Of a stretch of 64,000 nt of DNA, positions 911 through 46,325 are shown piece by piece (positions within the stretch are counted from its first letter, which is position 1; each line of letters opens with the position of its first letter). The stretch is taken from the IMG/VR virus record IMGVR_UViG_3300034072_000758, positions 434,001 through 498,000 of that record; one strand, written 5' to 3'. The notes below the pieces were generated by a model. It made no database searches. It had not been told where the DNA came from and saw only the letters and a list, made by a program, of their open reading frames with translations. The translations under genes were made by a program, and so were the position numbers.

Positions 911-2245
911 TCACACGAACCAGTCGGTTCCTTCTTTTGTATCCAATAGGGTGACGCCGCGTTCGGCCAAAGCATTCCGAATGATGTCCGCCATGACCCA
1001 ATCTTTACCGGCTCTTGCCAGATTGCGGTCGTAGATCAGACCTTCGATGATTTCACGCTCGTCCTTAGACACATTCTTGAACCAATCCTCGTATCGATGA
1101 TTGAGGACACCAAGCAATTGCGCAGCCGCAACGAACTCGGACTTGGTTTCCGGCTTCATCAAACTGGATAATTCAGCCAGAGCCAAAGGCGTATTCAGAT
1201 CATCATGAAGATGATCGAGGAATGATTGTGGCACCGGAACTTCGTGCGTGGTGAGCTTTGCCGTCTGGCGCAGGAAGGCATAGTAGCCATCCAGCCGGTT
1301 CTTCGTGGTTTGAAGAAGTTCTGGGGTCCAATTCAAGACGGTTCTATAATGCGCTGAGAGCAACGCCAAGCGCACGATTTCCCCATCCCATTCCTTTACG
1401 AGATCGTGGACCAACACGACATTCCCTACCGACTTGGACATCTTGCCGTTATTGGTCAGGAACTCGTTATGCATCCAGTAGCGGGAATACTCGTGATTAT
1501 GGCCGCAATGACCTTGAGCACATAACCCCTGAGAGATTTCATTCTCATGGTGCGGAAAGGCCAAGTCTATACCCCCGCCATGAATGTCGATAGGAAGACC
1601 CAGATTGGCTTCAATCATGGCCGAGCACTCAATGTGCCAACCGGGGCGTCCAGCACCCCACGGACTTTCCCAAGCCGGTTCACCGGGCTTCGACGGTTTC
1701 CATAGTACGAAGTCTTTTTGGTCGCGCTTATACGACACCTCACCGATCCGGCTTTCGGCTTCGTCATCCGAACCATTGGAGAAAACACCATGATCCGGGT
1801 ATGAATCCACGTCAAACAAAACGTGACCTTCCGACACATACGCATGGCCGTTCTTGATCAGACGCACAATCATGTCGATCATGGCCGGGATATGGTTGGT
1901 CGCCAGAGGTTCAATGGGAGGCCGTAGGACGCCCACGGAGGCCATGTCTTGACGATATATGTCCGTGTAGCGTTCAGCAATAACCTTGTAGTCCACGCCC
2001 TCCTGAGAGGCTTTCTGGATGATTTTATCATCGATGTCGGTGATGTTCCGAGCATAGATGACATGGTTATTTCCATACTTGTGGCGGAGAACACGAAACA
2101 GCAAATCGAATACGACCGCTGGGCGGGCATTGCCGATATGTGCGTGATTATATACCGTAGGACCACAGACGTACATCGTAATCCGGTTAGGATTTCGAGG
2201 AACGAAAGTTTCTTTGGATCGAGTTTTGCTGTTGAATATCTTCAT
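911..2245 (-). CDS. cysS: cysteinyl-tRNA synthetase
   Basis: MYVCGPTVY, HIGN, RNITDIDDKII, GRPGWHIECSAM, DIHGGG.DL.FPHHENE, KMSKS; start set at MKIFNS by family N-terminus. Confidence 0.97.
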   Translation of the reverse strand: MKIFNSKTRSKETFVPRNPNRITMYVCGPTVYNHAHIGNARPAVVFDLLFRVLRHKYGNNHVIYARNITDIDDKIIQKASQEGVDYKVIAERYTDIYRQDMASVGVLRPPIEPLATNHIPAMIDMIVRLIKNGHAYVSEGHVLFDVDSYPDHGVFSNGSDDEAESRIGEVSYKRDQKDFVLWKPSKPGEPAWESPWGAGRPGWHIECSAMIEANLGLPIDIHGGGIDLAFPHHENEISQGLCAQGHCGHNHEYSRYWMHNEFLTNNGKMSKSVGNVVLVHDLVKEWDGEIVRLALLSAHYRTVLNWTPELLQTTKNRLDGYYAFLRQTAKLTTHEVPVPQSFLDHLHDDLNTPLALAELSSLMKPETKSEFVAAAQLLGVLNHRYEDWFKNVSKDEREIIEGLIYDRNLARAGKDWVMADIIRNALAERGVTLLDTKEGTDWFV

Positions 2246-2290
2246 AGATAAATTCCTAACATAACCAATGACTGTTGGCAACACTATGGC

Positions 2291-16441: not shown

Positions 16442-19400
16442 TTAAACACGATTTTGATCCGAGATGAATATTAATCCATCGTAGACCGGTGTGCCGGTGT
16501 CATAATAAGATTGCTCAAACTTTTTGATCAGATAAACGGTTGTTCCGAAGTTCGGGGCTTTCTTGAAATTGACAGTCAAGCCGCTCGAAGTCGTAGTCAC
16601 CGTATAATCAACAGTGAAAGTCTTCGCAGAAAGGACAGGGAACCCCGTGTATCCATCGCTGGTGATCAGTGTTCCATTAGCATATACCAGAGGCTCATAG
16701 ACCGCCACAGACAGCCCATCCATACTATTTACACCCATCATAGTGAAAGATTTGTTCGATCCATTCCCAGCAGCACTCACCTTGAATATACGCTCATTGC
16801 CGACCGAGGTATTATGTGTCCCGCGACGAAGACCAGACAATTCGGTAACGCCACCATTTACAGTGATATTATCGAACTCAATCCGCTCACCATTGATCCA
16901 AATAACGCCACAACGATCCTGCTGTGTTATGCTGCCATCCAAAGCTTGAACGTCAATGACACGTGGGGGAATAAGATCGCCAGTTACCGACAGATAGATC
17001 GTGGAATTATTCAGATATAATGGTTGACTTAATGTTGCCACAGAAGATGTCATGTCAATAAGACGGAATGAATCTTCTCTCGCAACAAGAATTGGTATAT
17101 CATTTTCTACGGCACCGACGACGCCAGTATCGAACGAATATTCTTCCACTCCACCGGCATCATAGTCACCAGTTTCCTTTGGATTGAAGAGATCATATGC
17201 TGGTCTCGTCAAAGACAATTTATAGCTTTCTGGGGTGATCAGCGGTGCGTCAAACACGGTGACTACAATGTTCGGAATATATTCGTCGGTCGATGGTGGT
17301 ATATAGTCCCCAATACGGATCACTACGCGGTGAAGTTTGTTGTATTCGTTCACCCCAAATGCTTCAAAAATATCCCCGGCTTGGTCCATAAACACAGTTG
17401 GCCCATGCTTACCATAGGTATAACGATCAGATGAAGTACCAGCAAACCAAGAAACTGTATCCAGAGTTGGTCCAGCTACGTTAGACATGTAAGTAAATTC
17501 AGCGGCCTGAGTGTCATACGTAACGACATCAGCTTGAATAGCAAAACCAATGTTACTGTTATGAACTCCACCCATTTCTTTACGCATGACCAAACGATAA
17601 GTATCCGCGTCTAGCTTTTTCGTCGTAAACAACTCAGTGTAACCTACGTTTACTGTGAAGTTATTATCCGAAGTATCGATTACGGTCCCATCAAAACAAA
17701 GATCGGTGTTGGCCATATATGAACCAAAGATCGTATCGAATTGAGTATCGACGGTACACTCCGCCCCCGGAGTAGAGAACGGCACATACCCCATCCAACC
17801 ATTAGGGTAAGCAAACATGTTATTCTTGACGTGCGGGCAGATATTTGACCACGTTACCGAAGTGCCGCCATTGGCGATGTCGGCAGACACATATTCCTCG
17901 TGCGCGAACTGAACGCGGTTCTTGGATATGTAGTAATAGTAACGCATTTCCATAGTACCATTTGCGTAGTTCGGTAAGATAACGCCTTTACCATCGTCTC
18001 GTCCCGCCATAACCAGCGTATAGCTATCATTTAACCACTGTGTTGTATTGGCAATAACGGTATCATCAGTTGCGCTCGGAACATATACTTGATCATTCCA
18101 TTGTGCTATTGGCGGAAGCTTGAATAGTTGTAAACGCGAAACGCTATATCCAGTGGTAGCAGACACAAAGAATGAACCGGTATCTTGATCAAGATGTATA
18201 CAGTTTATGGATGGTCCAATACCAGTCAGATCATTGATACGATAAACGATACCACCGACCCTCACAGGGACTTGGTTGACAGTATCGACTTCATACAAAA
18301 TAAACCACGGGCTATACGAACCATATCCAGTAGGCACACAGCTACCACCCACCACAAAATAATTTGTATCTGGGATACCAACCGCAAACGTGATGGATTG
18401 ATAGAAATCATGCGGGACCGATGATGCTGGACTATCCGCATGAATGGTTACGTTGGCCACGGACTCATATGTGATTGTGCCGGTATTCACGTTCTGGAAA
18501 GAGAATGTTGTATCATCATTTCTAAAACGAATAAACACGGCGGTCGATCCATCTAAAGACAAATGAATTGGTGTATGGCTCCAAACCGAACTTATATCAG
18601 CGCTGTTCGCAACGGCATTGGCCACGAACAAATAAGCTTCGTCTTGTTCTTCCGGGTAAGGAATATCCAGCGGGTTAGCGGCATCCTGATAAACACCGTC
18701 CACACTAATCCAAGTGTATGTCGGCCCATTTAGTGACAGAACAACAGAGTTTTCGTCATTCACCAGAGAAGTCGCCATACCAGCGGCATTTGGATCAGTC
18801 AGATAGGTGATTTGAATTTCATCCCCCGCCGACAACACGGCGGTCATCACAACCGATGATCCCGTTACCGTATATTCATCCGGGTTCAGGCGCAGACCGT
18901 TGACATCCACGAACAATGTCTCCGGTGCTTGACTATTGTTTCCAATCACATATGTCGAGTTCGCATGGTAATTAAACACTTCGATCTGAACATTCGCCCC
19001 AGCGGTCAATTCGCTGAAAGTTCTCAGCGTGATTGTGTCGGCTGGTGTATTTGAAATAACGACCGTTTTGTTCCCGTGATCGACTGAATACAGGCTTGGT
19101 GAAATACGCTTACCATCAGCAAATGGAACAACGACATCCGCATTTTCAGTATAAGATACGAGGTGAACCGTTCCGTTGCTTAAGATGTCGTGATAGCCTT
19201 GTACTGGCATAGAAGCGCCGCCAGACATGAATACGTCAATACTCAAGGTATCGCTCACCGAAGGAGCAACCAACTCTTCTGGGTTATTGCGCTCCATCTG
19301 AAAGCCATCTTGTTCGTTGATAGTATCGTCGCCATCCTGATCGAGAATTGTAAAATCCTTTTCATCCGTGAATGATCCACCATCAATGCGATCATCCTTG

Positions 19401-22062: not shown

Positions 22063-23820
22063 ATGTCCACTATGATCAAAGTTGCCTCAGTGCAATTCAA
22101 TCCCGTTGTCGGCGACGTATTCGGCAATGCGGAGCGTATGCTTCAACTATACATTGAAGCGGCAAAGACCGCCGATCTGGTAGTCTTCCCCGAATGCTCC
22201 ATCAGTGGGTATCCCATCGAAGACCTCGCGTTGAAGGCGGATTTCATCGACAGATGTATCGAAGCGCGAAAATCATTCATTGATGCCGTGTATCTTTCCA
22301 AGGAAAAGGCCGGTGTCATTTTCGGATGCCCCAACCTAAACACCAATGGTAAAACCACAAACTCCGCATTCGCGGTCGATCCGGTTCACCAAGACTATTC
22401 GATCTTTGATAAACAACGCCTCCCGAATTATGGCGTGTTCGATGAAGTCCGTACTTTTGCCCCAGCAACCAAGCCTCAACCAACATGGCAGTTCCGCGAT
22501 CTCAAGATCGGCATTCTGATCTGCGAAGATGCGTGGCATTCCGGTTCGTTGAGCGGATGTATTGGTGAGCATTTCCCCAACCTGATGATCAGCATCAATG
22601 GTTCGCCGTTCGAAATCGGCAAGAATGTCATCCGCAAGAATGTAATCGTAGATCGTATCCACGAACTGTTCGAAGTCGGTGATGCGTTCGGCGTCCCCTT
22701 CGTCTATACCAACATGGTTGGTGGTCAAGACGAGATCGTATTTGATGGTAATTCGTTTGTCATCGACAAGAATGGCTACCGGGCTGTGCCTACCTTCGAA
22801 GAAGGTGTTCACTATTTCGATGTCTCGCTGGACTCGTTCCAACCGGGCGTTTACGATGTCGAGCCTTCCAGCATTGCCGATGTCTACAAATGTCTTGTCA
22901 CCGGCACGAGAGATTTCTTCGGAAAGCAAGGTTTCGTGTCCGGCGTTCTCGGCTATTCAGGTGGTGTAGATTCGGGTCTGGTGGCCGCTATCCTTGTGGA
23001 TGCGCAAGGACCGAAAAATGCCAATCTCGTGTCTCTTCCGTCGAAGTTCTCGGACCAAGCCTCGAAAGACGATGCCTTGGAAGGCGCTATTCGTTTGGGC
23101 GCTAACTATCGGTCGATCAGCATTGAACCGATTGTCCAAGCCCTACGCGATGCCTACAAGCCGTCTGAATACAATCCAAACAGCATGTCCATGATGAATG
23201 GCGCTCGTAAAAATACTGGCACGATCTTCACCACGGACCCGGAGTTGAGCAACTATTCGGGTGAACTGACCGGCGTGGCGGACGAAAACATCCAAGCTCG
23301 TGCTCGTGGTAATATCCTGATGGCTATCTCTAACCAAGAAGGCCACATGGTTCTGTCCACCGGTAATAAGTCGGAAGTGAGCCTCGGTTTCTGTACGATT
23401 TATGGTGACATGTCGGGTGGTTACAACCCGATCAAGGATTGCCCGAAGACGCTGGTATGGGCGCTATGTTTGTGGCGAAATCAAGCTGATCCGGCTGAAT
23501 ACGGCTTCCTTGGTCCCAAGGGTGAAGTTGTTCCGCAAGAGATCATCGACAAAAAGCCGGACGCTGGCTTGGCTGAAAATTCCAAAGGCGATCCGTTCGA
23601 CTACCGCAACATCACCGATCCAATCCTCAATATTTTGGTGGACAAGGCCGGTTCGGTTCAAGACGTGATCGATGCTGGTTTTGATCCTGCGGAAGCACAG
23701 CGCCACTACAAGCTTCTTCTGCGCTCGGAATACAAGCGCCGCCAAGCATGTCCCGGCATCAAGATCACTTCCAAATTACACGGGCGGGATCGACGTATCC
23801 CAATCGTCTATCGAGAATAA
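22063..23820 (+). CDS. nadE: glutamine-dependent NAD+ synthetase
   Basis: Nitrilase triad VFPE / K..LPNYGVFDE / ICEDAW; synthetase SGGVDS, ENIQARARG, LSTGNKSE, EYKRRQ..PGIK. Confidence 0.96.
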   Translation: MSTMIKVASVQFNPVVGDVFGNAERMLQLYIEAAKTADLVVFPECSISGYPIEDLALKADFIDRCIEARKSFIDAVYLSKEKAGVIFGCPNLNTNGKTTNSAFAVDPVHQDYSIFDKQRLPNYGVFDEVRTFAPATKPQPTWQFRDLKIGILICEDAWHSGSLSGCIGEHFPNLMISINGSPFEIGKNVIRKNVIVDRIHELFEVGDAFGVPFVYTNMVGGQDEIVFDGNSFVIDKNGYRAVPTFEEGVHYFDVSLDSFQPGVYDVEPSSIADVYKCLVTGTRDFFGKQGFVSGVLGYSGGVDSGLVAAILVDAQGPKNANLVSLPSKFSDQASKDDALEGAIRLGANYRSISIEPIVQALRDAYKPSEYNPNSMSMMNGARKNTGTIFTTDPELSNYSGELTGVADENIQARARGNILMAISNQEGHMVLSTGNKSEVSLGFCTIYGDMSGGYNPIKDCPKTLVWALCLWRNQADPAEYGFLGPKGEVVPQEIIDKKPDAGLAENSKGDPFDYRNITDPILNILVDKAGSVQDVIDAGFDPAEAQRHYKLLLRSEYKRRQACPGIKITSKLHGRDRRIPIVYRE

Positions 23821-30738: not shown

Positions 30739-31269
30739 ATGGGTACTCGTCATTTGGTGGTTGTTCGCTTGAACAATGAAGTAAAAGTCGCTCAGTATGG
30801 TCAATTCGACGGTTATATGAGCGGGGCTGGTAGAACAATACAACGTATTTTGTCGTTTGCTGATTTGAATTTGCTAAAAGAGTTAGTAGCAAAATGTTGG
30901 TGGATCACAGATGATGAACACAACAAGATGATGGCTGATCTTGGTGTCAAAAGTAATGACGGTTGGATTAGCTTGGATGACAGTAAAAAAATTGAAAAAG
31001 CTTATCCGCATCTTCATCGCAATTGTAGCGCCGAAGTCATCACTGAAATTCTCAACAGCGAAAACGGATTACCGCTTCAAAATTCATACGATTTTGGAGA
31101 AGATGGACTTTTTTGCGAATACACCTATACGGTCGATCTCGACAATGATACATTGACCGCACAAAGCGGGGGTTTGGACGGCAAAGTCCTTTTCCAAGGA
31201 CCAATCAACACGCTCCACACAATCCCACCATTTGAAGACCCCAAAGACGAAGAAGAAGACGAAGAATGA
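30739..31269 (+). CDS. conserved phage hypothetical protein (MGTR family)
   Basis: MGTRH...[12 protein letters not shown] and LFCEY.Y.VDLD motifs. Confidence 0.7.
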
Positions 31270-33047
31270 CCAAGACAAACATGCGAACGCAAACCTGTGG
31301 TGAATTGACCGTGGCCTATACTGGCGACACGGTGAGCCTGTGTGGCTGGATTCACCGCAAGCGAGATCATGGCGGCTTGCTGTTCATCGACTTACGTGAC
31401 AATTACGGACTGACCCAGATCGTAATGCAAAAGACCGCTGCCTGTTTCTCGGTGGTGGAGCACCTTCGCCAAGAAAGCGTAATTCGCGTAATCGGTAAGG
31501 TCGTAACGAGAACGGAAAATACACAAAACCCGAACCTCGCAACCGGGCAGATCGAAGTCATCGCTTCGGAAATTACAGTTCTGTCGGAAGCCTCGGAACT
31601 TCCAGTGCCAGTGTTCGGTGATGTTCAGTATCCAGAAGACCAACGTTTGAAGCATCGCTATCTCGATCTTCGCCGTGACGAACTCCACTCAAACATCCTG
31701 CTGCGCTCCAAGATCATTAGCTACCTGCGTAGGTTCATGGAGGGCGAAGGCTTTACTGAGTTTCAGACGCCTATTCTGACCGCATCTTCCCCAGAAGGCG
31801 CGCGCGACTTCCTCATTCCATCACGCCTTCATCCCGGCAAATTTTATGCCCTGCCTCAAGCACCACAACAATTCAAGCAACTTTTGATGGTGTCTGGCTT
31901 TGACCGCTATTTCCAGATCGCACCTTGCTTCCGCGACGAAGCCGCCCGTGCTGACCGGTCGCCGGGTGAGTTCTATCAACTCGATATTGAAATGTCTTTC
32001 GTCAATCAGGAAGACGTTTTCTCTCAGGCTGAACGTATCCTTCATTCGACCTTTACTGAGTTCTCGAACGGGAAGACCGTAAGTTCGTACCCATTCCAGC
32101 GAATCACCTACAAGGACTCGATGGAAAAATACGGCAACGATAAGCCCGATCTTCGTAACCCAATCGTCATGAGCGATGCTTCGCTTTATTTCGTGAACGG
32201 CGGCTTCGGTCTGTTTGAGAAAATGGCCAGCGACGGCAAAAGCTCGATCTGGGCTATTCCGGTCAAGGGCAATGGAAACATCAATCGCAAATTCTGCGAC
32301 AAGATGAACTCTTGGGCCATCGAAGAAGGCCAAAAAGGTATGGGATATATCTATTGGAACGAAGAAGGCGCACAAGGCCCAATCGCCAAGAATCTCCATG
32401 CCGATAAGCTGGGACAATTGGAAGCCGCCTATGAATTGGGTAACGGTGATGCCATATTCTTCGTGGCCGGGATCAAAAAGGATTTCCTCAAGTTCTGCGG
32501 ATTCGCCCGCACCAAGATCGCCGAAGAACTCGGTCTGATCAAGGATGATCATTTCCATTTCTGCTGGGTGGTGGATTTCCCAATGTTCGAACTATCGAAC
32601 GAAGGCAAAATCGATTTCGCCCACAATCCGTTCTCTATGCCACAAGGCGAAATGGAAGCTCTGGAAACCAAGAACCCGCTGGATATTCTGGCCTATCAGT
32701 ACGACATCGTGTGTAACGGCATCGAACTGTCCTCCGGGGCTATTCGTAACCACCGACCCGACATCATGCTCAAGGCTTTTGAAATCGCTGGTTACAAGGC
32801 CGAGGAAGTGGAAGAACGCTTCGGCGGTATGTTGAACGCATTCCGCTATGGCGCGCCTCCCCACGGTGGTCTGGCTCCCGGTGTTGACCGCATGGTCATG
32901 ATGCTGGCTAATAAATCCTCCATCCGAGACATCATCGCTTTCCCGCTGAATCAGCAAGGACAAGATTTGATGATGAACGCACCATCGGAAGTCACGGATA
33001 AACAACTCAAAGAGTTGAACATCCGAACATACAAGCCATTGAGCTAA
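31266..33047 (+). CDS. aspS: aspartyl-tRNA synthetase, probably non-discriminating
   Basis: [55 protein letters not shown]; His in RDHGG is the ND-type residue. Confidence 0.97.
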
Positions 33048-33478: not shown

Positions 33479-34705
33479 TTACAGCCACACTTTCCCATAT
33501 GCTGATTGAAGAATAGACGGGATGAACACTTTACCACCTTCGTCCTGATAGTTTTCCAGAACAGCCAACAAAGTTCTACCAACCGCCAGTCCAGACCCAT
33601 TTAAGGTGTGGACTGGTTCTTTTTTGCCTTGAGCATTGGTGAAGCGAGTCTTCATGCGATTGGCTTGGAAATCGCCACAATTGGATACCGAGCTAATCTC
33701 ACGATAAGTTTTCTGTGATGGCACCCAAACTTCGATGTCGTAAGTCTTTTGTGCTCCGAAGCCCATGTCACCCGCGCATAATAACATGATGCGATATTTT
33801 ATACCCAATGAAGTGAGGATGTTTTCAGCACAAGATAACATGAACTCGTGCTCTTGTGCCGACTTCTCAGGCGTAGTGATCGACACCATTTCAACTTTGT
33901 TAAATTGATGCTGGCGTAAGATGCCATGCGTGTCCTTACCAGCGCTTCCGGCTTCGGATCGGAAACATGGGGTCAGCGCAGTTAGACGAAGGGGTAATTC
34001 ACCCTCAGCCAAAATCTTATCAGCGACATAATTTGTCAAAGTCACTTCGGCGGTCGGGATCAGAAAATGTTCATCAGTGTTCACCGAGTACAGGTCATCG
34101 ATGAATTTAGGAAGCTGACCAGTTCCATACAAGGCCGTGTCTTTCACCAGCAACGGAGTGGAGCATTCCTCGAATCCATTTTTAACCTGACATTCAAGCA
34201 TATACTGCCCGATAACTCGTTCGAGACGTGCCACGGGGCCGCGCATGAATGAGAAGCGTGTGCCAGACATCGCTACCCCCGCTGATATATCGAGGCCGTA
34301 TTTGCTCCCGATCTCAACATGGTCTTTCGGGTCTTTTATGGAACGGAGCGGAATATCATTGACACGAACCAATTGATTGTCGTGCTCGTCTTTTCCAACC
34401 GGAACGTCATTGGCTGGGACATTTGGGATGTCGAACAAATAGTCTTCAAGTTCCCCGGCCAGATAATCGACCAAGCCTTCGGCAGTAGTTATTTCGGCCT
34501 TCACCGCCACCCCGGTTTCATGGTCTTTATTCCGCGCGGCATCCTTGCGCTTGGCGTACAAAGCCTCAAGATCAGTCAACGATTTACGATGATCTGTATC
34601 CTTTTTGAGAATGTCCGAAACTATCCGAGACCCGTCAAGCCCTCTCTTATTCAACCCGCTGGCAACGGCTTCTGGATTCTCGCGGATGGTCTTTATATTG
34701 ATCAT
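33479..34705 (-). CDS. serS: seryl-tRNA synthetase
   Basis: N-terminal coiled arm, LIPTAEV.LTN, FRSEAGSAGKDT.GILRQHQFNKVE, YREISS.SNC.DFQA.R, TLNGSGLAVGRT. Confidence 0.97.
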   Translation of the reverse strand: MINIKTIRENPEAVASGLNKRGLDGSRIVSDILKKDTDHRKSLTDLEALYAKRKDAARNKDHETGVAVKAEITTAEGLVDYLAGELEDYLFDIPNVPANDVPVGKDEHDNQLVRVNDIPLRSIKDPKDHVEIGSKYGLDISAGVAMSGTRFSFMRGPVARLERVIGQYMLECQVKNGFEECSTPLLVKDTALYGTGQLPKFIDDLYSVNTDEHFLIPTAEVTLTNYVADKILAEGELPLRLTALTPCFRSEAGSAGKDTHGILRQHQFNKVEMVSITTPEKSAQEHEFMLSCAENILTSLGIKYRIMLLCAGDMGFGAQKTYDIEVWVPSQKTYREISSVSNCGDFQANRMKTRFTNAQGKKEPVHTLNGSGLAVGRTLLAVLENYQDEGGKVFIPSILQSAYGKVWL

Positions 34706-41906: not shown

Positions 41907-42373
41907 GTCCCTCCGCTATTGGGTCGTGTGAACATTCTAGGTAAGTAACACGTTCTCATACAGGCTCGCGGTTAAGTCTATGGGTGATCTGAGTGGCCTA
42001 AGATGTATGTGGTTCGATTCCACTATGGGATACCAATTCGCTCAAATGAGCAAACGAATTGTTGTTTAAAGGGTGTATGGAGGCACGTTCTGTCCGAGTG
42101 GGGACAGAAAGGCGGGGGTTCGAATCCCCGTTGTCCGAATCAGGTGGTGTTTTCGAGGGAGACCTTGGAAATGTGGGTTCGAGTCCCACAGAGACAGAAC
42201 AACAGACCAACGGCGAGAGTTGCGTATCTATAAGTTCAGGCCCGAAAGGGATAGAGTGAAGCTGAGGATGCCGCGAAGGAAGTAAGCGCGGATTCGATGA
42301 CGCTGAAACGAATATTACACCCTGACGCTCTCAATGATTAGGCCCTCGGACATACCATCCGAGGGCCTTTTTT
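41907..42373 (+). ncRNA. unidentified structured ncRNA (~460 nt) with a tRNA-like 5' module and two further T-loop hairpins
   Basis: T-loops at 42013, 42119, 42178; CCA at 42033-35; helices 42070-77/42316-23 and 42087-94/42193-200; GNRA hairpins; terminator 42340..42373. Confidence 0.7.
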
Positions 42374-42704
42374 ATATGTATAGCAACACGTCCATTAAAA
42401 GATTATCTATACATTCCACCGAGGGCTTGTCCGTGTGCGGGAAATTAGTGTACATCAAACGATTATCATTGAACGTAAATTCATACTTATATTCTTGAAT
42501 ACCATTATTTCTAAGCTTATACGTGATGTCATCAATAAAAATCTCCCAAATAAAAACCGAATCAATTTTGTCTATTTCAATACGTTTATACTTATGTCCA
42601 TAGCCCTCACGACATTGCGTCCATTTACCCAAGCTCTCTATTTGCTTAAAAGCATTTTCAAGAGACCTGAGTAAATGTCGTTGTTCCTGCGGTGTGTAAA
42701 TCAT
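42372..42704 (-). CDS. hypothetical protein, shared C-terminal motif
   Basis: Start MIYTPQ gives an ATGA overlap with the K+ channel stop; ends ECIDNLLMDVLLYI. Confidence 0.6.
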   Translation of the reverse strand: MIYTPQEQRHLLRSLENAFKQIESLGKWTQCREGYGHKYKRIEIDKIDSVFIWEIFIDDITYKLRNNGIQEYKYEFTFNDNRLMYTNFPHTDKPSVECIDNLLMDVLLYI

Positions 42705-43045
42705 TTCTTTTGAGACCGAATGTATTTCAGAATTTCTTCTTGTTCTTCGTGCGTGAACTCGTTGCGATTCTCGACCATCGTACTGATGATGCGACCGATC
42801 AACAAAGGCATAATGAAAAGAAGAATGACGTGCATCAAGCCAGTCGCAATAAGCCGCCCAGCCAAAGTTGTGGGATACATGTCGCCGTAGCCGACCGTAG
42901 AGGCAGTCACGACGCACCACCAAAGACTATCCCAGAAAGTCTTTCCTTCGGCCCACGAGTAGCCCAGAGCCGCCAGAAACACGATCAATACATACAGAGC
43001 AATAAGCTCACGGATCGTGTTTGTCGCCTTGATCAAATACTTCAT
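42701..43045 (-). CDS. two-TM potassium channel (KcsA-like, 114 aa)
   Basis: TM1, pore helix SLWWCVVTAST, filter TVGYGD, TM2; AAGGAG RBS. Confidence 0.9.
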   Translation of the reverse strand: MKYLIKATNTIRELIALYVLIVFLAALGYSWAEGKTFWDSLWWCVVTASTVGYGDMYPTTLAGRLIATGLMHVILLFIMPLLIGRIISTMVENRNEFTHEEQEEILKYIRSQKK

Positions 43046-43104
43046 ACTATCTCCTTTTCTAATAGAGAAGCGCAGCATACTACTTTTTAATGGAAGCATC
43101 AAGA

Positions 43105-43413: not shown

Positions 43414-43490
43414 TGGCAGGGGTGGAGAGATTCGAACTCCCATCGCGCAGTTTTGGAGACTGCCGCTCTAACCGTTGGAGCTACACCCCT
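43414..43490 (-). tRNA. trnW: tRNA-Trp(CCA)
   Basis: AGGGGTG/CACCCCT, GCAGT-CTCCAAA-ACTGC, G73-CCA. Confidence 0.95.
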
Positions 43491-43502
43491 ATAGGCGATC
43501 AA

Positions 43503-43781
43503 TCACTTGACCGCAAAGGAAGAAATGAGCTTACAACTCGTTTTTACAAACCCTACATAACGAGGGTCCGAGAAACGGTCGAAGTCATTCAAATAATCGA
43601 AGTCCGCCTTGTCGATTTCATACACATGATATTCGACGGCTGGTGAATGCTGTTCTACAACCGTAAAACTACGGTCGCTTCTCAAGCCACGTTCTTTATC
43701 TGCGATCTTCACAGCTTCAATCGGCCTTAAGTTATTCGTCAAGGCGACGATATGATTTTGATTCAAAACAGCGGTACGCAT
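43503..43781 (-). CDS. hypothetical protein inside the tRNA array
   Basis: AAGGAG RBS, 92 aa. Confidence 0.6.
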   Translation of the reverse strand: MRTAVLNQNHIVALTNNLRPIEAVKIADKERGLRSDRSFTVVEQHSPAVEYHVYEIDKADFDYLNDFDRFSDPRYVGFVKTSCKLISSFAVK

Positions 43782-43841
43782 ACTATTACTCCTTACCCGA
43801 CATTAATAATTTATTTACATTATCAAAGTCAATTTTATTTT

Positions 43842-43932
43842 TGGAGGACGTGGTGGGACTCGAACCCACGGTGGTCTATGTTACGACAACAGGTTAAGAG
43901 CCTGTCCCTCTCGCCGCTGAGGTGACACGTCC
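43842..43932 (-). tRNA. tRNA-Lys(CTT) with long variable arm (91 nt)
   Basis: GGACGTG/CACGTCC, ACAGG-CTCTTAA-CCTGT, ~19-nt variable region with a GTC/GAC stem, U73-CCA. Confidence 0.85.
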
Positions 43933-44026
43933 GTATCAAAAATGTAGGGAGATCGGGTTCACCACAATCATGCTGGTACACAAGGTCGTCACATGATTAG
44001 TAACCCACTAGGGCATGGCTCCAGCT

Positions 44027-44102
44027 TGGTGAACACGGTGGGGGTCGAACCCACGACCTACTGATTAAAAGTCAGTTGCTCTACCTACTGAGCTACGTGT
44101 TC
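44027..44102 (-). tRNA. trnK: tRNA-Lys(TTT), canonical
   Basis: GAACACG/CGTGTTC, ACTGA-CTTTTAA-TCAGT, A73-CCA. Confidence 0.95.
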
Positions 44103-44103
44103 G

Positions 44104-44183
44104 TGCGCCCTGTCGGACTCGAACCGACACTCGTTAGAAGCAGATTTTAAGTCTGCCGGGTCTACCAATTTCCCCAAGGGCGC
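44104..44183 (-). tRNA. trnL: tRNA-Leu(TAA)
   Basis: GCGCCCT/AGGGCGC, GCAGA-CTTAAAA-TCTGC, type II arm, A73, no CCA. Confidence 0.92.
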
Positions 44184-44233
44184 TTAGGTACTTTTCTTGT
44201 AAACATCAAAGATGATTTTGGCAACATCTTTGT

Positions 44234-44309
44234 TGGCGAGGATAGAAGGATTCGAACCTCCGACACATGCGTTCGAAGCGCATTGCTCTGTCCACTGAGC
44301 TATATCCCC
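44234..44309 (-). tRNA. trnR: tRNA-Arg(TCG)
   Basis: GGGGATA/TATCCTC, ATGCG-CTTCGAA-CGCAT, G73-CCA. Confidence 0.93.
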
Positions 44310-44310
44310 G

Positions 44311-44395
44311 TGCGCCGAGAGGGATTCGAACCCTCATACCATTACGGTGTCCGTTTTTGAAACGGGTGCGTCTACCAAAGTTCCGCCACCAGCGC
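44311..44395 (-). tRNA. trnL: tRNA-Leu(CAA)
   Basis: GCGCTGG/TCGGCGC, CCCGT-TTCAAAA-ACGGA, type II arm, A73. Confidence 0.9.
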
Positions 44396-44446
44396 ATAGA
44401 AAACCTTTAATATAGATCGTTATCCACATCCATATTAAAGGTTATG

Positions 44447-44530
44447 AGGATGTAGAGGGACTCGAACCCCCGATGGTCTTTTGACAACGGATTAAAAGCC
44501 CGTCCCTCTCGCCGCTGAGGTGATACATCC
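44447..44530 (-). tRNA. tRNA-Lys(TTT) with long variable arm
   Basis: GGATGTA/TACATCC, ACGGG-CTTTTAA-TCCGT, GTC-AAAA-GAC variable hairpin, D-arm identical to the 43842 tRNA, U73, no CCA. Confidence 0.85.
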
Positions 44531-44545
44531 ATAGTAGTATTTGTT

Positions 44546-44622
44546 TGGAGGACGTGGTGGGACTCGAACCCACAACATTCGGTTTAAGAGACCGACGCTC
44601 TAACCATTGTAGCTACACGTCC
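44546..44622 (-). tRNA. trnK: tRNA-Lys(CTT), short variable loop
   Basis: Same acceptor and T-arm as 43842..43932; TCGGT-CTCTTAA-ACCGA; U73-CCA. Confidence 0.93.
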
Positions 44623-44639
44623 GTATCAAACAAATACTG

Positions 44640-44712
44640 CGCGGATCAAGGGACTCGAACCCATAACCCTCTGTTTAGAAGACAGATGCTCGTCCAATTG
44701 AGCTTCATCCGC
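44640..44712 (-). tRNA. trnR: tRNA-Arg(TCT)
   Basis: GCGGATG/GATCCGC (7:66 mismatch), TCTGT-CTTCTAA-ACAGA. Confidence 0.88.
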
Positions 44713-44721
44713 ATAGTAGTG

Positions 44722-44807
44722 TGTGCCGAGGGGGACTCGAACCCCCACGCCCATTACAGGCCCCGGTTTCTGAAACCGGGAAGTCTACCAAATTTCATCA
44801 TCAGCAC
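44722..44807 (-). tRNA. trnL: tRNA-Leu(CAG)
   Basis: GTGCTGA/TCGGCAC, CCGGT-TTCAGAA-ACCGG, type II arm. Confidence 0.9.
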
Positions 44808-44832
44808 GTATGCTCTTTCGAGCAAAGTCTTG

Positions 44833-44912
44833 TACGGGTGAGAGGACTCGAACCTCCACGATTGCTCGCTAGAACCTAAACCTAGTGCGTCTACCAGTTT
44901 CGCCACACCCGC
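44833..44912 (-). tRNA. trnL: tRNA-Leu(TAG)
   Basis: GCGGGTG/CACCCGT, CTAGG-TTTAGGT-TCTAG, type II arm. Confidence 0.92.
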
Positions 44913-44913
44913 G

Positions 44914-44986
44914 CACTGCCAGTAGGACTCGAACCTACAACCTTCTGATTCGTAATCAGATGCTCATCCAGTTGAGCTATGGCAGC
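44914..44986 (-). tRNA. trnR: tRNA-Arg(ACG)
   Basis: GCTGCCA/TGGCAGT, TCTGA-TTACGAA-TCAGA. Confidence 0.92.
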
Positions 44987-44992
44987 ATAAAG

Positions 44993-45102
44993 CAACAAGA
45001 CGGTGGGGTTCGAACCCACAACCTTTCGGCTCCGACTTTGACCGCAACGGCTTTTCGCAAACCATTACGTGCGTGTGTATACCCATTCCACCACGCCAAG
45101 TT
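44993..45102 (-). ncRNA. oversized tRNA-like RNA (110 nt) without a canonical anticodon loop
   Basis: T-arm GTGGG-TTCGAAC-CCCAC, type II D-arm GTG-GAATGGGTATA-CAC, imperfect acceptor AACTTGGCG/CGTCTTGTT, ~55 nt multi-hairpin centre. Confidence 0.65.
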
Positions 45103-45110
45103 ACTTCAAG

Positions 45111-45195
45111 TGTCCATGAAAGGATTCGAACCTTCACGCCCATTACAGGCAACAGCCTCTCAAGCTGCCGTGGCTACCAATTACACCACACGGAC
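45111..45195 (-). tRNA. trnL: tRNA-Leu(GAG)
   Basis: GTCCGTG/CATGGAC, GCAGC-TTGAGAG-GCTGT, type II arm. Confidence 0.92.
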
Positions 45196-45204
45196 ATACG
45201 CAAG

Positions 45205-45321
45205 TGCGTTCGGGAGGATTCGAACCTCCAACCTCTATACTCGTTTGATCGTCATCCGACCAGTATAGCGGTATCCAACCCTCTAATGGGCTGGCGTGGC
45301 TACCAATTTCACCACGAGCGC
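45205..45321 (-). ncRNA. oversized Leu-like tRNA (117 nt) with 7-bp anticodon stem and ~45-nt variable arm
   Basis: GCGCTCG/CGAACGC acceptor, Leu-type D-arm, CCAGCCC-ATTAGA-GGGTTGG, CTATACT/AGTATAG arm, GGAGG-TTCGAAT-CCTCC, A73. Confidence 0.7.
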
Positions 45322-45331
45322 ATATTACGAG

Positions 45332-45406
45332 CGGGACTGGCAGGATTCGAACCTGCGACCTTCGGTTTCGTAGACCGGCGCTCTTATTCCGCTGAGCTAC
45401 AGTCCC
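45332..45406 (-). tRNA. trnR: tRNA-Arg(ACG), second copy
   Basis: GGGACTG/CAGTCCC, CCGGT-CTACGAA-ACCGA. Confidence 0.92.
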
Positions 45407-45436
45407 GTAATACTTTGATTCACAATGTAAAAGAAC

Positions 45437-45474
45437 ATAGAAAAACCCCCAAAAGCGTATTGCTCTTGGGGGTT
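45437..45474 (-). terminator. attenuator terminator (3:4 helix) directly upstream of the tRNA array
   Basis: AACCCCCAAGAGC-AATAC-GCTTTTGGGGGTT followed by TTTCT on the minus strand. Confidence 0.85.
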
Positions 45475-45532
45475 CGATCTTAACCGTTATGTTGTCTGCC
45501 TATTTCATCCGATGAAACGCAGACATGCGCGA

Positions 45533-45598
45533 TTAAACCGTACCCCCTTTCGGGCGGCGGAGCCACTTTCTTAACAGTTTAAGGCGCAGAGCGAACAT
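45533..45598 (-). CDS. leader (attenuator) peptide MFALRLKLLRKWLRRPKGGTV
   Basis: AGGA 10 nt upstream of ATG; codons 4-17 are 13/14 Leu/Arg/Lys/Trp; stop lies within the antiterminator strand. Confidence 0.8.
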   Translation of the reverse strand: MFALRLKLLRKWLRRPKGGTV

Positions 45599-45644
45599 AA
45601 CGAAAAATTCCTGTGATTTTGGGGCGAAACCCCGTGTGGATTTC

Positions 45645-45674
45645 ACCCTATCATTTCTATTTATCATCGGTCAA
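45645..45674 (-). promoter_or_regulatory. tRNA-array promoter (sigma70-like, with an embedded TAAATA late element)
   Basis: TTGACC-18 nt-TAGGGT preceded by TG; ATAAATA within the spacer. Confidence 0.55.
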
Positions 45675-45713
45675 CAAAAAAAGTTATTTTCCGATGAATT
45701 TTTTTGAACAAAG

Positions 45714-45744
45714 AAAAAGCGCCGCACGTTTCCATGCGGCGCTT
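45714..45744 (-). terminator. intrinsic terminator
   Basis: AAGCGCCGCA..TGCGGCGCTTTTT after the HNH-like gene; insulates the leader. Confidence 0.8.
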
Positions 45745-45749
45745 CATCA

Positions 45750-46325
45750 TTACTTTACGATCTTGAAACCGTGCTTCTTGTAGTATGGAACGTTCTCGAA
45801 ATCGATGACCGACACCATAAACTTACCATAGCCGTTGCTGACCATGACTTGTTCGACCGTGGCCACGACCTGATCCACGACCGACTTGACCGCCTTCGCC
45901 GCTTTGATCTTCGGCTTGATGGTTTCGACAGCGGGTTCAACCGACGCTTCATCTTCAATAACGCGCGGCGCGATTTCGGCTGCGACCGTTTCGATGCGAG
46001 TGTCGATGACATTGATGGAATCGCCGAACTTGGAGACTTCACGATCCAGACGCTTGAGTTCGAGGTTTTCGACCGCGTTGTTATGACCGTTACCATCCTT
46101 ATGAACGACTTCATCATTCTTCGTCGCGCCGAGGAAGCAGATGGCTATCAGACGATGGAGGCCGACCTTGGAATGGAGGGCGACGTTCTTGAGACTGATA
46201 CGGAGCTTATCGCCATCCTTCTGATAGGATAGTTCGGTGCCGTCCTTCTTGAAGACGCGACCATCGGAAGTGGCAAGATATTGTTCGTCCGCGAAATAGA
46301 AACGGACGCGCTTGACGCTCGACAT
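45750..46325 (-). CDS. HNH-fold protein with Lys/Ala-rich C-terminal extension
   Basis: ATSDGRVF, LHRLIAICF, VVHKDGNGHNNAVENLE; codon-adapted rather than AT-rich. Confidence 0.7.
   Translation of the reverse strand: MSSVKRVRFYFADEQYLATSDGRVFKKDGTELSYQKDGDKLRISLKNVALHSKVGLHRLIAICFLGATKNDEVVHKDGNGHNNAVENLELKRLDREVSKFGDSINVIDTRIETVAAEIAPRVIEDEASVEPAVETIKPKIKAAKAVKSVVDQVVATVEQVMVSNGYGKFMVSVIDFENVPYYKKHGFKIVK

What the first reader, a model, noticed from the sequence alone, without database searches (positions are those of the whole stretch)
44993..45102. 110-nt tRNA-like RNA whose anticodon region is replaced by GNRA-capped hairpins
Seen: it retains a T-arm and type II D-arm, and has an up to 9-bp acceptor with two U-U mismatches. 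The centre has no 7-nt anticodon loop. It folds instead as CGCA/TGCG plus TGGTTT-GCGA-AAAGCCG and AGCC-GAAA-GGTT hairpins. It lies between intact tRNAs, so flanking processing would release it. Inference: a tRNA-scaffolded ncRNA, or a tRNA interrupted by a small intron-like insert.
Basis: partly seen in the sequence, partly recalled or inferred. Interest (0 to 1): 0.6.

Follow-up and report, generated by a model that had tools for sequence, protein, structure and literature searches.

The report
Anticodon-less tRNA look-alike in phage
Inside a tRNA gene cluster of a 517-kb phage sits a tRNA-shaped gene that keeps the tRNA "elbow" and end-helix but has a closed 13-base-pair hairpin where the anticodon should be, so it cannot decode; whether it is a working tRNA mimic or a decaying gene copy remains open.

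Summary
The feature is real. It lies on the minus strand of a 516,805-bp phage with direct terminal repeats, whose nearest named relatives are Agrobacterium phage Atu_ph07 and Sinorhizobium phage Phosso. It sits between tRNA-Leu(GAG) and tRNA-Arg(ACG) in a 16-member Lys/Leu/Arg/Trp array.

It keeps a canonical T-arm, a Leu-type D-arm and a terminal helix with two adjacent U-U mismatches. That helix runs four pairs into the flanks, which none of the genome's 57 tRNAs does. There is no anticodon loop.

The centre folds as a 2+11-bp helix with a GCGAA pentaloop, then a small AGCC-GAAA-GGUU hairpin.

Rfam's tRNA model does not match it. ARAGORN reads it only at a relaxed threshold, as Ile(AAU) with a 14-nt "intron".

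No homologue could be retrieved. Contig summaries from two other sequencing runs show related phages keep it, while one of them lacks the neighbouring 117-nt aberrant tRNA.

Best reading (about 0.45): a non-decoding tRNA mimic, excised with its neighbours. Decaying pseudogene is close behind (about 0.35). Spliced tRNA is unlikely (about 0.07). Moderate interest; a new variant of a known kind.

The parts
45094..45104 (-). 5' strand of the terminal (acceptor-like) helix. CUUGGCG (45100-45094) is the canonical 7 positions, including the two U of the U-U mismatches. GUAA (45104-45101) is a 4-nt extension that pairs with the trailer.
   Evidence: Sequence; MFE folds. None of the genome's 57 tRNAs has 3 or more leader-trailer pairs, whereas this element has 4.
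45075..45093 (-). U8-G9 connector and a class II (Leu-type) D-arm: GUG stem, 11-nt loop GAAUGGGUAUA carrying A14, G18, G19 and A21, then CAC.
   Evidence: Alignment with the phage's five Leu tRNAs and the 117-nt neighbour. Model R1 built from the element scores Ser(UGA) 41.6 and Leu(UAA) 40.9 bits in its own genome, and matches a Leu(CAA) and three Leu(UAG) genes in unrelated arrays.
45041..45074 (-). Two-nt connector (AC), then the closed helix that replaces the anticodon arm: G-U and C-G pairs, a bulged A, an 11-bp stem CGUAAUGGUUU/AAGCCGUUGCG, and a GCGAA pentaloop (45058-45054).
   Evidence: Constrained and free folds. P(pair 34-60) = 0.985 with the outer arms enforced. The sequence is unique in the genome.
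45032..45040 (-). Nine-nt single-stranded linker (CAAAGUCGG) between the long helix and the variable-arm hairpin.
   Evidence: Folds.
45020..45031 (-). Variable-arm-like hairpin AGCC-GAAA-GGUU, capped by a GNRA tetraloop.
   Evidence: Folds. It sits just 5' of the T-arm, where class II tRNAs carry their variable arm.
45003..45019 (-). Canonical T-arm GUGGG-UUCGAAC-CCCAC.
   Evidence: Sequence. Found by the T-arm motif scan of the whole genome. Nearest paralogue is the T-arm of tRNA-Lys(UUU), 92% over 25 nt.
44992..45002 (-). 3' strand of the terminal helix. CGUCUUG (45002-44996) is followed by UUGC (44995-44992), which pairs with the leader. The base at the discriminator position is U, not the A found in all Leu tRNAs of the array.
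   Evidence: Sequence; folds; discriminator table.
45110..45195 (-). Upstream neighbour tRNA-Leu(GAG). Its 3' processing would define the element's 5' side.
   Evidence: ARAGORN and Rfam, 48.5 bits.
44913..44986 (-). Downstream neighbour tRNA-Arg(ACG). RNase P cleavage at its 5' end would free the element's 3' side.
   Evidence: ARAGORN and Rfam, 66.3 bits.

Best explanation
The locus is a tRNA-derived gene for a tRNA-shaped RNA that cannot decode.

Shown:
- It has the elbow of a class II, Leu-type tRNA (D-arm and T-arm with the residues that lock them together).
- It has a terminal helix of 11 positions with a tandem U-U.
- A closed 2+11-bp helix with a GCGAA loop stands where the anticodon arm should be.
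- A small GAAA-capped hairpin stands where the variable arm should be.
- It lies in the same orientation and spacing as the 15 tRNAs around it.

Inferred:
- It is transcribed with the array. Two terminator-like hairpins lie just upstream of the array.
- It is cut free by RNase P at the 5' end of the downstream tRNA-Arg and by 3' trimming of the upstream tRNA-Leu. Its elbow, terminal helix and closed hairpins then protect it, so it accumulates as a stable RNA of about 105-120 nt.
- With no anticodon loop it cannot be used by the ribosome.
- With U at position 73, rather than the A of every Leu tRNA in the array, it is probably not charged by the host LeuRS.
- I think it is most likely kept as a tRNA mimic. 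It would present the tRNA elbow and end-helix, plus two GNRA-type loops, to some tRNA-binding protein. One candidate is a host tRNA-targeting defence enzyme.

The mimic or decoy role is the least supported step.
For: - tRNA-derived anatomy.
- All modelled helices are perfectly paired apart from the tandem U-U (30 of 32 pairs).
- The terminal helix extends 4 pairs into leader and trailer. None of the genome's 57 tRNAs has 3 or more such pairs.
- The central sequence is not a repeat or mobile insertion; it is unique in the genome.
- It is retained in related phages seen in other sequencing runs. The X3 contig is identical over 45038-45276. The X5 contig covers 45017-45194 with 9 substitutions and 2 gaps in 178 nt. 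The adjoining piece 45321-45804 (tRNA-Arg plus upstream intergenic DNA) has 58 substitutions and 20 gaps in 484 nt, and coding pieces are 10-18% diverged. The same X5 relative lacks the neighbouring 117-nt aberrant tRNA, so array members do get lost.
- Terminator-like hairpins upstream of the array.
- Precedent: T4 makes two small RNAs of unknown role, RNAC and RNAD, from its tRNA region (PMC3014915, PMC9697503).
Against: - There is no alignment of relatives, so there is no covariation test.
- The positions of the X5 differences were not shown. The X3 identity extends into the upstream intergenic DNA (1 difference in 156 nt), so it may reflect a recent shared block rather than selection.
- Fold energies are only weakly better than shuffles (z = -2.3 and -1.8).
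- No analogue was found in Atu_ph07 or Phosso.
- Aberrant tRNA genes are common in this genome and clade, which fits gene birth and death.
- No RNA run holds the sequence, so expression is unknown.
- No partner protein has been identified.
Confidence: 0.45

Rival explanations
1. Decaying tRNA pseudogene. A redundant class II tRNA copy in a duplicate-rich array lost its anticodon arm through rearrangement. It is still co-transcribed but has no function, and its hairpins are incidental.
For: - Two acceptor mismatches, U at position 73, no anticodon loop and a 2-nt rather than 1-nt link after the D-stem.
- No Rfam tRNA match at E <= 10.
- The central fold is not significant.
- The array and genome hold many duplicate tRNAs and other aberrant ones: the 117-nt neighbour, and genome 425084-425154. 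The neighbour is absent from a relative.
- XacN1 is reported to carry a tRNA pseudogene among the tRNA-like sequences of its terminal repeats (PMC5852040).
- No homologue in Atu_ph07 or Phosso.
Against: - Decay should also hit the D- and T-arms. Here D 3/3, T 5/5, hairpin 13/13 and variable hairpin 4/4 are all paired, and the elbow residues are kept.
- The terminal helix is longer than in any true tRNA of the genome.
- The element persists in relatives whose coding DNA is 10-18% diverged, and appears less diverged than intergenic DNA.
Confidence: 0.35
2. Interrupted tRNA. A 14-nt insert (UUUGCGAAAAGCCG, or the same length shifted by one or two bases) is removed after transcription, leaving a class II-shaped tRNA with anticodon AAU.
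For: - ARAGORN in intron mode at 80% threshold gives tRNA-Ile(AAU) with loop GUAAUGG, which has U33 and a purine at 37.
- Short inserts in the anticodon loop do occur in this clade. Atu_ph07 has three tRNA genes with inserts of roughly 30-50 nt between nucleotides 35 and 36.
Against: - It is found only below ARAGORN's default threshold.
- The restored stem has a C-U mismatch, position 32 is G and position 34 is A, and the acceptor keeps two mismatches.
- Rfam's tRNA model, which scores the Atu_ph07 interrupted genes at 54-57 bits, finds nothing here.
- The pre-splicing cloverleaf is 10 kcal/mol less stable than the continuous hairpin.
- I see no bulge-helix-bulge arrangement in the favoured fold, and no "...|UAA" junction like the Atu_ph07 cases.
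- From general knowledge, not tested here: bacteria and phages are known to splice only group I introns in tRNAs, and those are far longer.
Confidence: 0.07
3. A cis-acting piece of the array transcript rather than a free RNA, such as a spacer or processing module that sets the order of cleavage. Alternatively, a chance arrangement of hairpins.
For: It has no detectable family and weak fold statistics. tRNA-like processing signals are known elsewhere, for example the t-elements of plant mitochondria (general knowledge, not tested).
Against: - Real tRNAs on both sides already supply the processing signals.
- A D-arm, a T-arm and complementary ends in exact tRNA register are not a chance product.
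Confidence: 0.05

Closest known systems
Phage T4 RNAC and RNAD (small RNAs of the T4 tRNA region)
   Same: They are small RNAs transcribed from a phage tRNA gene cluster. They are not tRNAs and their role is still unknown (PMC3014915; confirmed as late RNAs in PMC9697503).
   Different: No sequence or structure comparison was possible, because Rfam has no family for them. The present phage is only distantly T4-like (UvsX and gp32 homologues). Whether RNAC and RNAD keep a full tRNA elbow was not checked here.
tRNA pseudogenes in jumbo-phage tRNA arrays (e.g. XacN1)
   Same: A degenerate tRNA-like sequence lying among many intact tRNA genes of a large phage (PMC5852040).
   Different: Here the D-arm, T-arm and all new helices are intact, the terminal helix is lengthened, and only the anticodon arm is replaced. 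That pattern is not simple decay.
Non-decoding tRNA mimics: tmRNA tRNA-like domain, bacterial Y RNA (YrlA), mascRNA, gammaherpesvirus tRNA-like RNAs
   Same: These RNAs keep the tRNA acceptor/T-arm or elbow for processing, stability or protein binding, and lack a working anticodon (general knowledge).
   Different: - No Rfam hit for tmRNA, YrlA or mascRNA at the element.
- The tmRNA domain lacks a D-stem and carries G3-U70. YrlA has the opposite topology, with its ends in the anticodon-side stem.
- The phage has its own separate two-piece tmRNA.
Interrupted tRNA genes of Agrobacterium phage Atu_ph07 (found here; the one record stretch checked, around 68159-68280, carries no tRNA annotation)
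   Same: Same phage clade. They are tRNA genes with extra structured RNA in the anticodon region: 68159-68280, 323905-324023 and 335108-335213.
   Different: Those keep perfect exons (54-57 bits). The insert sits between nucleotides 35 and 36 and is followed by UAA. The window element has no recoverable anticodon stem-loop and gets no Rfam score.
Engineered tRNA scaffolds for RNA expression
   Same: The design is the same: a tRNA body with the anticodon arm swapped for a hairpin of interest, which cells process and keep stable (general knowledge, not tested).
   Different: Those are artificial. A natural counterpart with a defined cargo function has not been shown here.

Membership tests
Canonical tRNA (Rfam RF00005) | Score at or above the family's gathering threshold (29 bits) | tested here: not met
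   No match to the element even at E <= 10, in a 2.4-kb and a 346-nt search. The whole-genome search lists 60 matches at E <= 0.01, and none of the listed ones falls on this locus.
Canonical tRNA (Rfam RF00005) | 5-bp anticodon stem with a 7-nt loop (U33, purine 37) | tested here: not met
   The favoured fold is a 2+11-bp helix with a 5-nt loop. A 7-nt loop appears only if 14 nt are removed, and only at ARAGORN's 80% threshold.
Canonical tRNA (Rfam RF00005) | 7-bp acceptor stem with a free discriminator and 3' end | tested here: not met
   Five of 7 pairs plus a tandem U-U. Four further pairs involve positions -1 to -4 and 73 to 76, against a maximum of 2 in the genome's 57 tRNAs.
Canonical tRNA (Rfam RF00005) | T-arm (5 bp, UUCRANY loop) and D-arm with A14 and G18-G19 | tested here: met
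   GUGGG-UUCGAAC-CCCAC, and GUG-GAAUGGGUAUA-CAC.
Class II tRNA-Leu | 3-bp D-stem with an 11-nt Leu-type D-loop, and a variable-arm hairpin | tested here: met
   It aligns with the phage's Leu D-arms. AGCC-GAAA-GGUU lies at the variable-arm site. Model R1 matches Leu and Ser tRNAs best.
Class II tRNA-Leu | Discriminator A73 (a major LeuRS identity element in E. coli, from general knowledge) and a Leu anticodon | tested here: not met
   Position 73 is U, whereas all five Leu tRNAs of the array and the 117-nt neighbour have A. There is no anticodon.
Intron-containing tRNA (protein-spliced type, or the Atu_ph07 35/36 type) | Exons that join into a canonical anticodon stem-loop | tested here: not met
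   Only a sub-threshold Ile(AAU) model with a C-U stem mismatch. The Atu_ph07 cases score 54-57 bits.
Intron-containing tRNA (protein-spliced type, or the Atu_ph07 35/36 type) | Bulge-helix-bulge splice motif, or a splicing endonuclease gene in the phage | tested here: inconclusive
   The favoured fold is a continuous helix, which I see as having no 3-nt bulges. The genome was not searched for a splicing endonuclease or RNA ligase.
tmRNA tRNA-like domain, Y RNA (YrlA) | Match to the Rfam models; G3-U70 with an mRNA-like part (tmRNA); ends in the Ro-binding stem (YrlA) | tested here: not met
   No such hit on the element. The phage's tmRNA lies elsewhere, at about genome 332,920-333,300 (97.5 bits). 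No Ro/Rsr gene was looked for.
Stable non-tRNA RNAs of phage tRNA clusters (T4 RNAC/RNAD kind) | Encoded within the tRNA cluster, co-oriented with it, and not a tRNA | tested here: met
   Position between Leu(GAG) and Arg(ACG) on the same strand.
Stable non-tRNA RNAs of phage tRNA clusters (T4 RNAC/RNAD kind) | Accumulates as a discrete stable RNA during infection | not testable with these tools
   No RNA run holds the stretch. Only assembled contigs were available.

The most novel reading that the evidence does not exclude
A natural tRNA scaffold. The huge phage would use a tRNA body, processed and stabilised by the host's tRNA machinery, to display two GNRA-type loops on rigid helices. The RNA would act as a decoy or inhibitor for a host tRNA-targeting defence enzyme, or as a dedicated cofactor of a phage protein. 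It would then be one of a set of shape-altered tRNAs in this Lys/Leu/Arg array, alongside the class II-shaped Lys tRNAs and the 117-nt Leu-like tRNA with a closed anticodon helix.
Probability: 0.15. Interest if true: 0.7.

Novelty: new variant of a known kind. Interest (0 to 1): 0.4.

Why it matters
Large phages carry dozens of tRNAs, and recent work links phage tRNAs to escape from host enzymes that cut tRNAs (PMC10264068, PMC13056530). An RNA that keeps everything a tRNA needs for processing and protein recognition, but has deliberately lost the ability to decode, would be a different tool: a mimic rather than a spare part. It would also give a natural example of the "tRNA scaffold" idea used in RNA engineering.

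If it is only a decaying copy, it still matters for annotation. Standard tRNA finders miss it, and this genome and its relatives hold several such non-standard tRNA genes.

Tried and rejected
**Searches for relatives that led nowhere**
- Megablast and blastn of the element and of its 117-nt neighbour against GenBank phages gave only T-arm-sized matches.
- Three exact-pattern scans of IMG/VR found nothing: central hairpin plus T-arm, the class II Lys D-arm, and the canonical Lys(CUU) core.
- UvsX-based locus searches gave nothing closer than 58% identity in IMG/VR, JGI metagenomes or GTDB genomes. ARAGORN found no tRNAs in the nine IMG/VR loci scanned.
- Word-based protein searches found only the query itself or nothing useful. 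I used the 92-aa ORF inside the array, the C-terminal part of the HNH protein, and a spurious ORF across the array.
- The full protein-library search with the ORF that overlaps the element found only translated, unrelated tRNA arrays.
- The genome search does not draw relatives for a virus record.

**Model and read searches**
- A single-sequence covariance model (R1) found only ordinary class II tRNAs in Atu_ph07, Phosso and other loci. It found no second copy in the element's own genome.
- It reported summary counts but not the positions of the nine differences in the X5 contig, so no covariation test was possible.

**Ideas rejected**
- The central hairpin as a repeated or mobile palindrome: it is unique in the genome.
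- An intrinsic terminator inside the element: the only scanner hit is the T-arm itself, and no U-run follows the long hairpin.
- A phage LeuRS or LysRS that could pair with odd tRNAs: none is present.
- A quick look at orphan T-arms in the Phosso and Atu_ph07 arrays: mostly tRNAs that ARAGORN missed, or otherwise odd tRNAs. None lacked an anticodon in the way this element does.

Full report
**Where it is**

The window is bases 434,001-498,000 of a 516,805-bp virus record with direct terminal repeats. The phage has a UvsX-like recombinase and a gp32-like single-strand DNA-binding protein. Its UvsX is 54.7% identical to that of Agrobacterium phage Atu_ph07 and 53.8% to that of Sinorhizobium phage Phosso. 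Nothing closer than 58% exists in IMG/VR, JGI metagenomes or GTDB genomes.

ARAGORN finds 57 tRNA genes in the genome, and Rfam's tRNA model gives 60 matches. The finding lies on the minus strand inside one array, 43414-45406. The order of transcription is: Arg(ACG), a 117-nt aberrant Leu-like tRNA, Leu(GAG), THE ELEMENT, Arg(ACG), Leu(UAG), Leu(CAG), Arg(UCU), Lys(CUU), Lys(UUU), Leu(CAA), Arg(UCG), Leu(UAA), Lys(UUU), Lys(CUU), a 92-aa ORF, Trp. Two terminator-like hairpins lie just upstream of the array (45745-45716 and 45475-45443), so the array probably has its own transcription start.

**Checking the observation**

Read on the minus strand, the element has these parts:
- A 5' strand CUUGGCG (45100-45094), followed by U-G.
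- A D-arm GUG-GAAUGGGUAUA-CAC. It aligns with the D-arms of the phage's Leu tRNAs and keeps A14, G18-G19 and A21.
- A T-arm GUGGG-UUCGAAC-CCCAC (45019-45003), directly followed by CGUCUUG. That strand pairs with the 5' strand apart from two adjacent U-U mismatches.

The helix continues for four more pairs into the flanks (GUAA with UUGC). I measured the same quantity for all 57 tRNAs of the genome: 25 have no such extra pair, 31 have one, one has two, and none has three or more. The ends of this RNA are therefore built differently from those of a tRNA that needs a free NCCA end.

Between the D-arm and the T-arm there is no 7-nt loop. With the outer arms enforced, the centre folds as G-U, C-G, a bulged A, then an 11-bp stem CGUAAUGGUUU/AAGCCGUUGCG closed by GCGAA. 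A 9-nt linker follows, then AGCC-GAAA-GGUU.

Its pairs have an ensemble probability of about 0.001. So one loop is a true GNRA tetraloop. The other is a GCGAA pentaloop, which fits the GNRNA pattern of the lambda boxB loops. That resemblance is from memory and was not tested.

**How tRNA-like is it?**

Rfam's tRNA model gives no match, even at E <= 10 in a 346-nt search. Under the same conditions the 117-nt neighbour scores 34.8 bits. ARAGORN finds the element only in intron mode at an 80% threshold. It then reads tRNA-Ile(AAU) with a 14-nt insert, a C-U mismatch in the anticodon stem, and the mismatched acceptor.

A covariance model built from the element with my structure (R1) scores the element at 138.8 bits. 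The next best hits in the genome are Ser(UGA) at 41.6 and Leu(UAA) at 40.9. In unrelated arrays its hits include a Leu(CAA) and three Leu(UAG) genes. In Atu_ph07 and Phosso its best hits are 78-91 nt long, the size of ordinary tRNAs. So the body is a class II, Leu/Ser-type tRNA, and there is no second copy.

The central 55 nt are unique in the genome, so this is not a repeated palindrome dropped into a tRNA gene. On energy alone the folds are only modestly better than shuffles: z = -2.3 for the whole element and -1.8 for the centre.

**Relatives**

No homologous copy could be fetched; the failed searches are listed under Tried and rejected. The only comparative evidence is the contig summary.
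- Run X3 comes from a different study. Its contig is identical over 45038-45276, while its contigs over nearby protein genes differ by 4-8%. However, its contig over the upstream intergenic DNA differs at only 1 of 156 positions. The identity may therefore reflect a recently shared block.
- Run X5 holds a more distant relative, with coding pieces 10-18% diverged. One 856-nt contig (depth 3.8) covers 45017-45194 with 9 substitutions and 2 gaps in 178 nt. It then skips 45195-45320 and continues over 45321-45804 with 58 substitutions and 20 gaps.

Two things follow. The relative keeps the element but lacks the 117-nt aberrant tRNA, so members of this array are gained or lost. Also, the element plus Leu(GAG) is less diverged than the piece 45321-45804, which is tRNA-Arg plus upstream intergenic DNA. 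Even if all 11 differences fell in the 86 nt of the element, that would be about 13%, against about 16% for that adjoining piece. The true figure for the element is probably lower. The positions were not reported, so covariation cannot be judged. This is suggestive evidence only.

**What it most likely is**

The identity is well supported: a tRNA-derived gene whose product has a tRNA elbow and end-helix but cannot decode.

The open question is whether it is maintained by selection. Evidence for maintenance:
- Every helix except the tandem U-U is perfectly paired, and the elbow residues are intact, although the centre has been completely rebuilt.
- The terminal helix is lengthened in a way no tRNA of this genome shows.
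- Both new hairpins carry GNRA-type caps.
- It persists in diverged relatives while its neighbour does not.

Evidence against maintenance:
- The fold statistics are weak.
- There are no covariation data.
- No analogue exists in the two cultured relatives.
- Odd tRNA genes are generally abundant here.

I put a retained, non-decoding tRNA mimic at about 0.45 and a plain pseudogene at about 0.35.

The release route is an inference from standard tRNA processing: RNase P at the downstream tRNA-Arg, 3' trimming of the upstream tRNA-Leu, and protection by the closed helices. The lack of charging is inferred from U73, and the phage encodes no LeuRS. A decoy role against tRNA-targeting defences is a hypothesis prompted by the literature (PMC10264068, PMC13056530, and PMC3014915 on PrrC). 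No data from this locus support it.

**The intron reading**

While searching relatives with R1 and with Rfam, I found three tRNA genes in Atu_ph07 that carry inserts of roughly 30-50 nt. The one record stretch I checked, around 68159-68280, carries no tRNA annotation.
- 68159-68280: loop CUUU | 48 nt | UAA, which I read as Lys(UUU); 56.5 bits.
- 323905-324023: CUGU | about 46 nt | UAA, probably Asn(GUU); 57.2 bits.
- 335108-335213: UUUG | about 33 nt | UAA, possibly Thr(UGU); 54.7 bits.

They show that short inserts in the anticodon loop occur in this clade. They also set a standard that the window element fails: no clean exons, no Rfam score, no UAA junction. The favoured fold is an unbroken helix rather than a splice motif. 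I put this reading at about 0.07.

**Comparison with known things, and novelty**

The nearest described analogues are T4's RNAC and RNAD, small RNAs from the T4 tRNA region whose roles are still unknown (PMC3014915, PMC9697503). Next come the tRNA pseudogenes noted in jumbo-phage arrays (PMC5852040). In working principle it resembles other non-decoding tRNA mimics (the tmRNA tRNA-like domain, YrlA, mascRNA, herpesvirus tRNA-like RNAs) and engineered tRNA scaffolds. It is a member of none of these by the tests run.

I rate it a new variant of a known kind, of moderate interest (0.4). It would rise sharply if relatives show covariation or if a stable RNA and a partner are found.

Noticed in passing
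window 45205-45321 (-): A 117-nt Leu-like tRNA that ARAGORN misses; Rfam finds it only with lax filters (34.8 bits). It forms a clean cloverleaf (z = -4.6) with a variable arm of about 45 nt, a 7-bp anticodon helix with a 6-nt loop AUUAGA (UAG inside), a C-A acceptor mismatch and A73. It is absent from the relative in run X5 (a 126-nt skip).
   Followed up: partly
window 43842-43932 (-) and 44446-44530 (-): Two tRNAs with Lys anticodons (CUU, UUU) but a class II shape. Both share the same 22-nt D-arm (UCACCUCAGCGGCGAGAGGGAC), which looks to me like a Tyr/Ser-type arm, and both have a variable-arm hairpin. The CUU one shares its acceptor, T-arm and UCCA end with the canonical Lys(CUU) at 44546-44622. 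A Lys tRNA with a long variable arm is unusual. No match to the D-arm in IMG/VR.
   Followed up: partly
Atu_ph07 MF403008.1: 68159-68280, 323905-324023, 335108-335213 (all -): Three tRNA genes (54-57 bits) with inserts of roughly 30-50 nt placed between anticodon nucleotides 35 and 36, each followed by UAA. I read them as Lys(UUU), probably Asn(GUU), and possibly Thr(UGU). The record stretch around the first carries no tRNA annotation. The inserts are far too short for group I introns. Two of them contain a hairpin with a 7-nt loop, one of which matches the T-arm motif. The first gene has promoter-like and terminator-like sequences of its own.
   Followed up: partly
Atu_ph07 MF403008.1, about 113,000-113,253 (-): The 5' half of a Leu-type tRNA (acceptor, D-arm, start of the anticodon arm) is followed by at least 170 nt of other sequence. 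This may be a tRNA-Leu gene with a large intron. Rfam gave no hit at E <= 0.1.
   Followed up: no
genome about 332,920-333,300 (+), outside the window (locus L023 223-596): A permuted (two-piece) tmRNA of the alphaproteobacterial type (RF04321, 97.5 bits; RF01849, 72.3 bits). This fits an alphaproteobacterial host, as do the nearest cultured relatives.
   Followed up: partly
genome 425084-425154 (+), in the Phe/Ile/Met/Gln/Asn/Pro/Asp array: Another aberrant tRNA-like gene that ARAGORN misses (Rfam 29.5 bits). By eye it has an intact acceptor, T-arm and A73-CC, a D-region expanded to about 29 nt, and an 8-nt anticodon loop (CCUAUGUU).
   Followed up: partly
window 42080-42215 (+) and genome 431870-431998 (+): Two unannotated structured stretches, each with two T-arm-like hairpins (for example CGGGG-GUUCGAAU-CCCCG and GUGGG-UUCGAGU-CCCAC). 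The first has flanking 8-nt complementary ends. No Rfam family matches them.
   Followed up: partly
window 911-2284 (-), 31266-33047 (+), 33479-34705 (-): The phage encodes CysRS, AspRS and SerRS, all above the NCBIfam cut-offs. An NAD synthetase lies at 22063-23820. No LeuRS or LysRS is found in the genome.
   Followed up: yes
genome 117291-117364 (+) and 351587-351662 (-): A tRNA with anticodon CUA (an amber suppressor, which ARAGORN calls Pyl) and a tRNA-Val with A34 (AAC; only 33.1 bits in Rfam). I did not examine whether the phage reads TAG as a sense codon.
   Followed up: no
window 42701-43102 (-): A 133-aa ORF with a TVGYGD potassium-channel selectivity-filter motif, giving weak NCBIfam K-channel hits. 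It is a small phage-encoded channel-like protein next to the tRNA array.
   Followed up: partly
window 45750-46325 (-): An HNH endonuclease gene (PHROG 959/59) lies immediately upstream of the array and is followed by two terminator-like hairpins. Its 90%-identity cluster in the 15-billion-protein collection holds only itself.
   Followed up: partly
Phosso PV764938.1, tRNA region 419-462 kb and 1-40 kb: ARAGORN misses several tRNA-like genes here. Examples are a class II Tyr(GUA) near 421,000 and a Pro(UGG)-like gene with a degenerate D-arm near 19,150. Non-standard tRNAs look common in this clade.
   Followed up: partly
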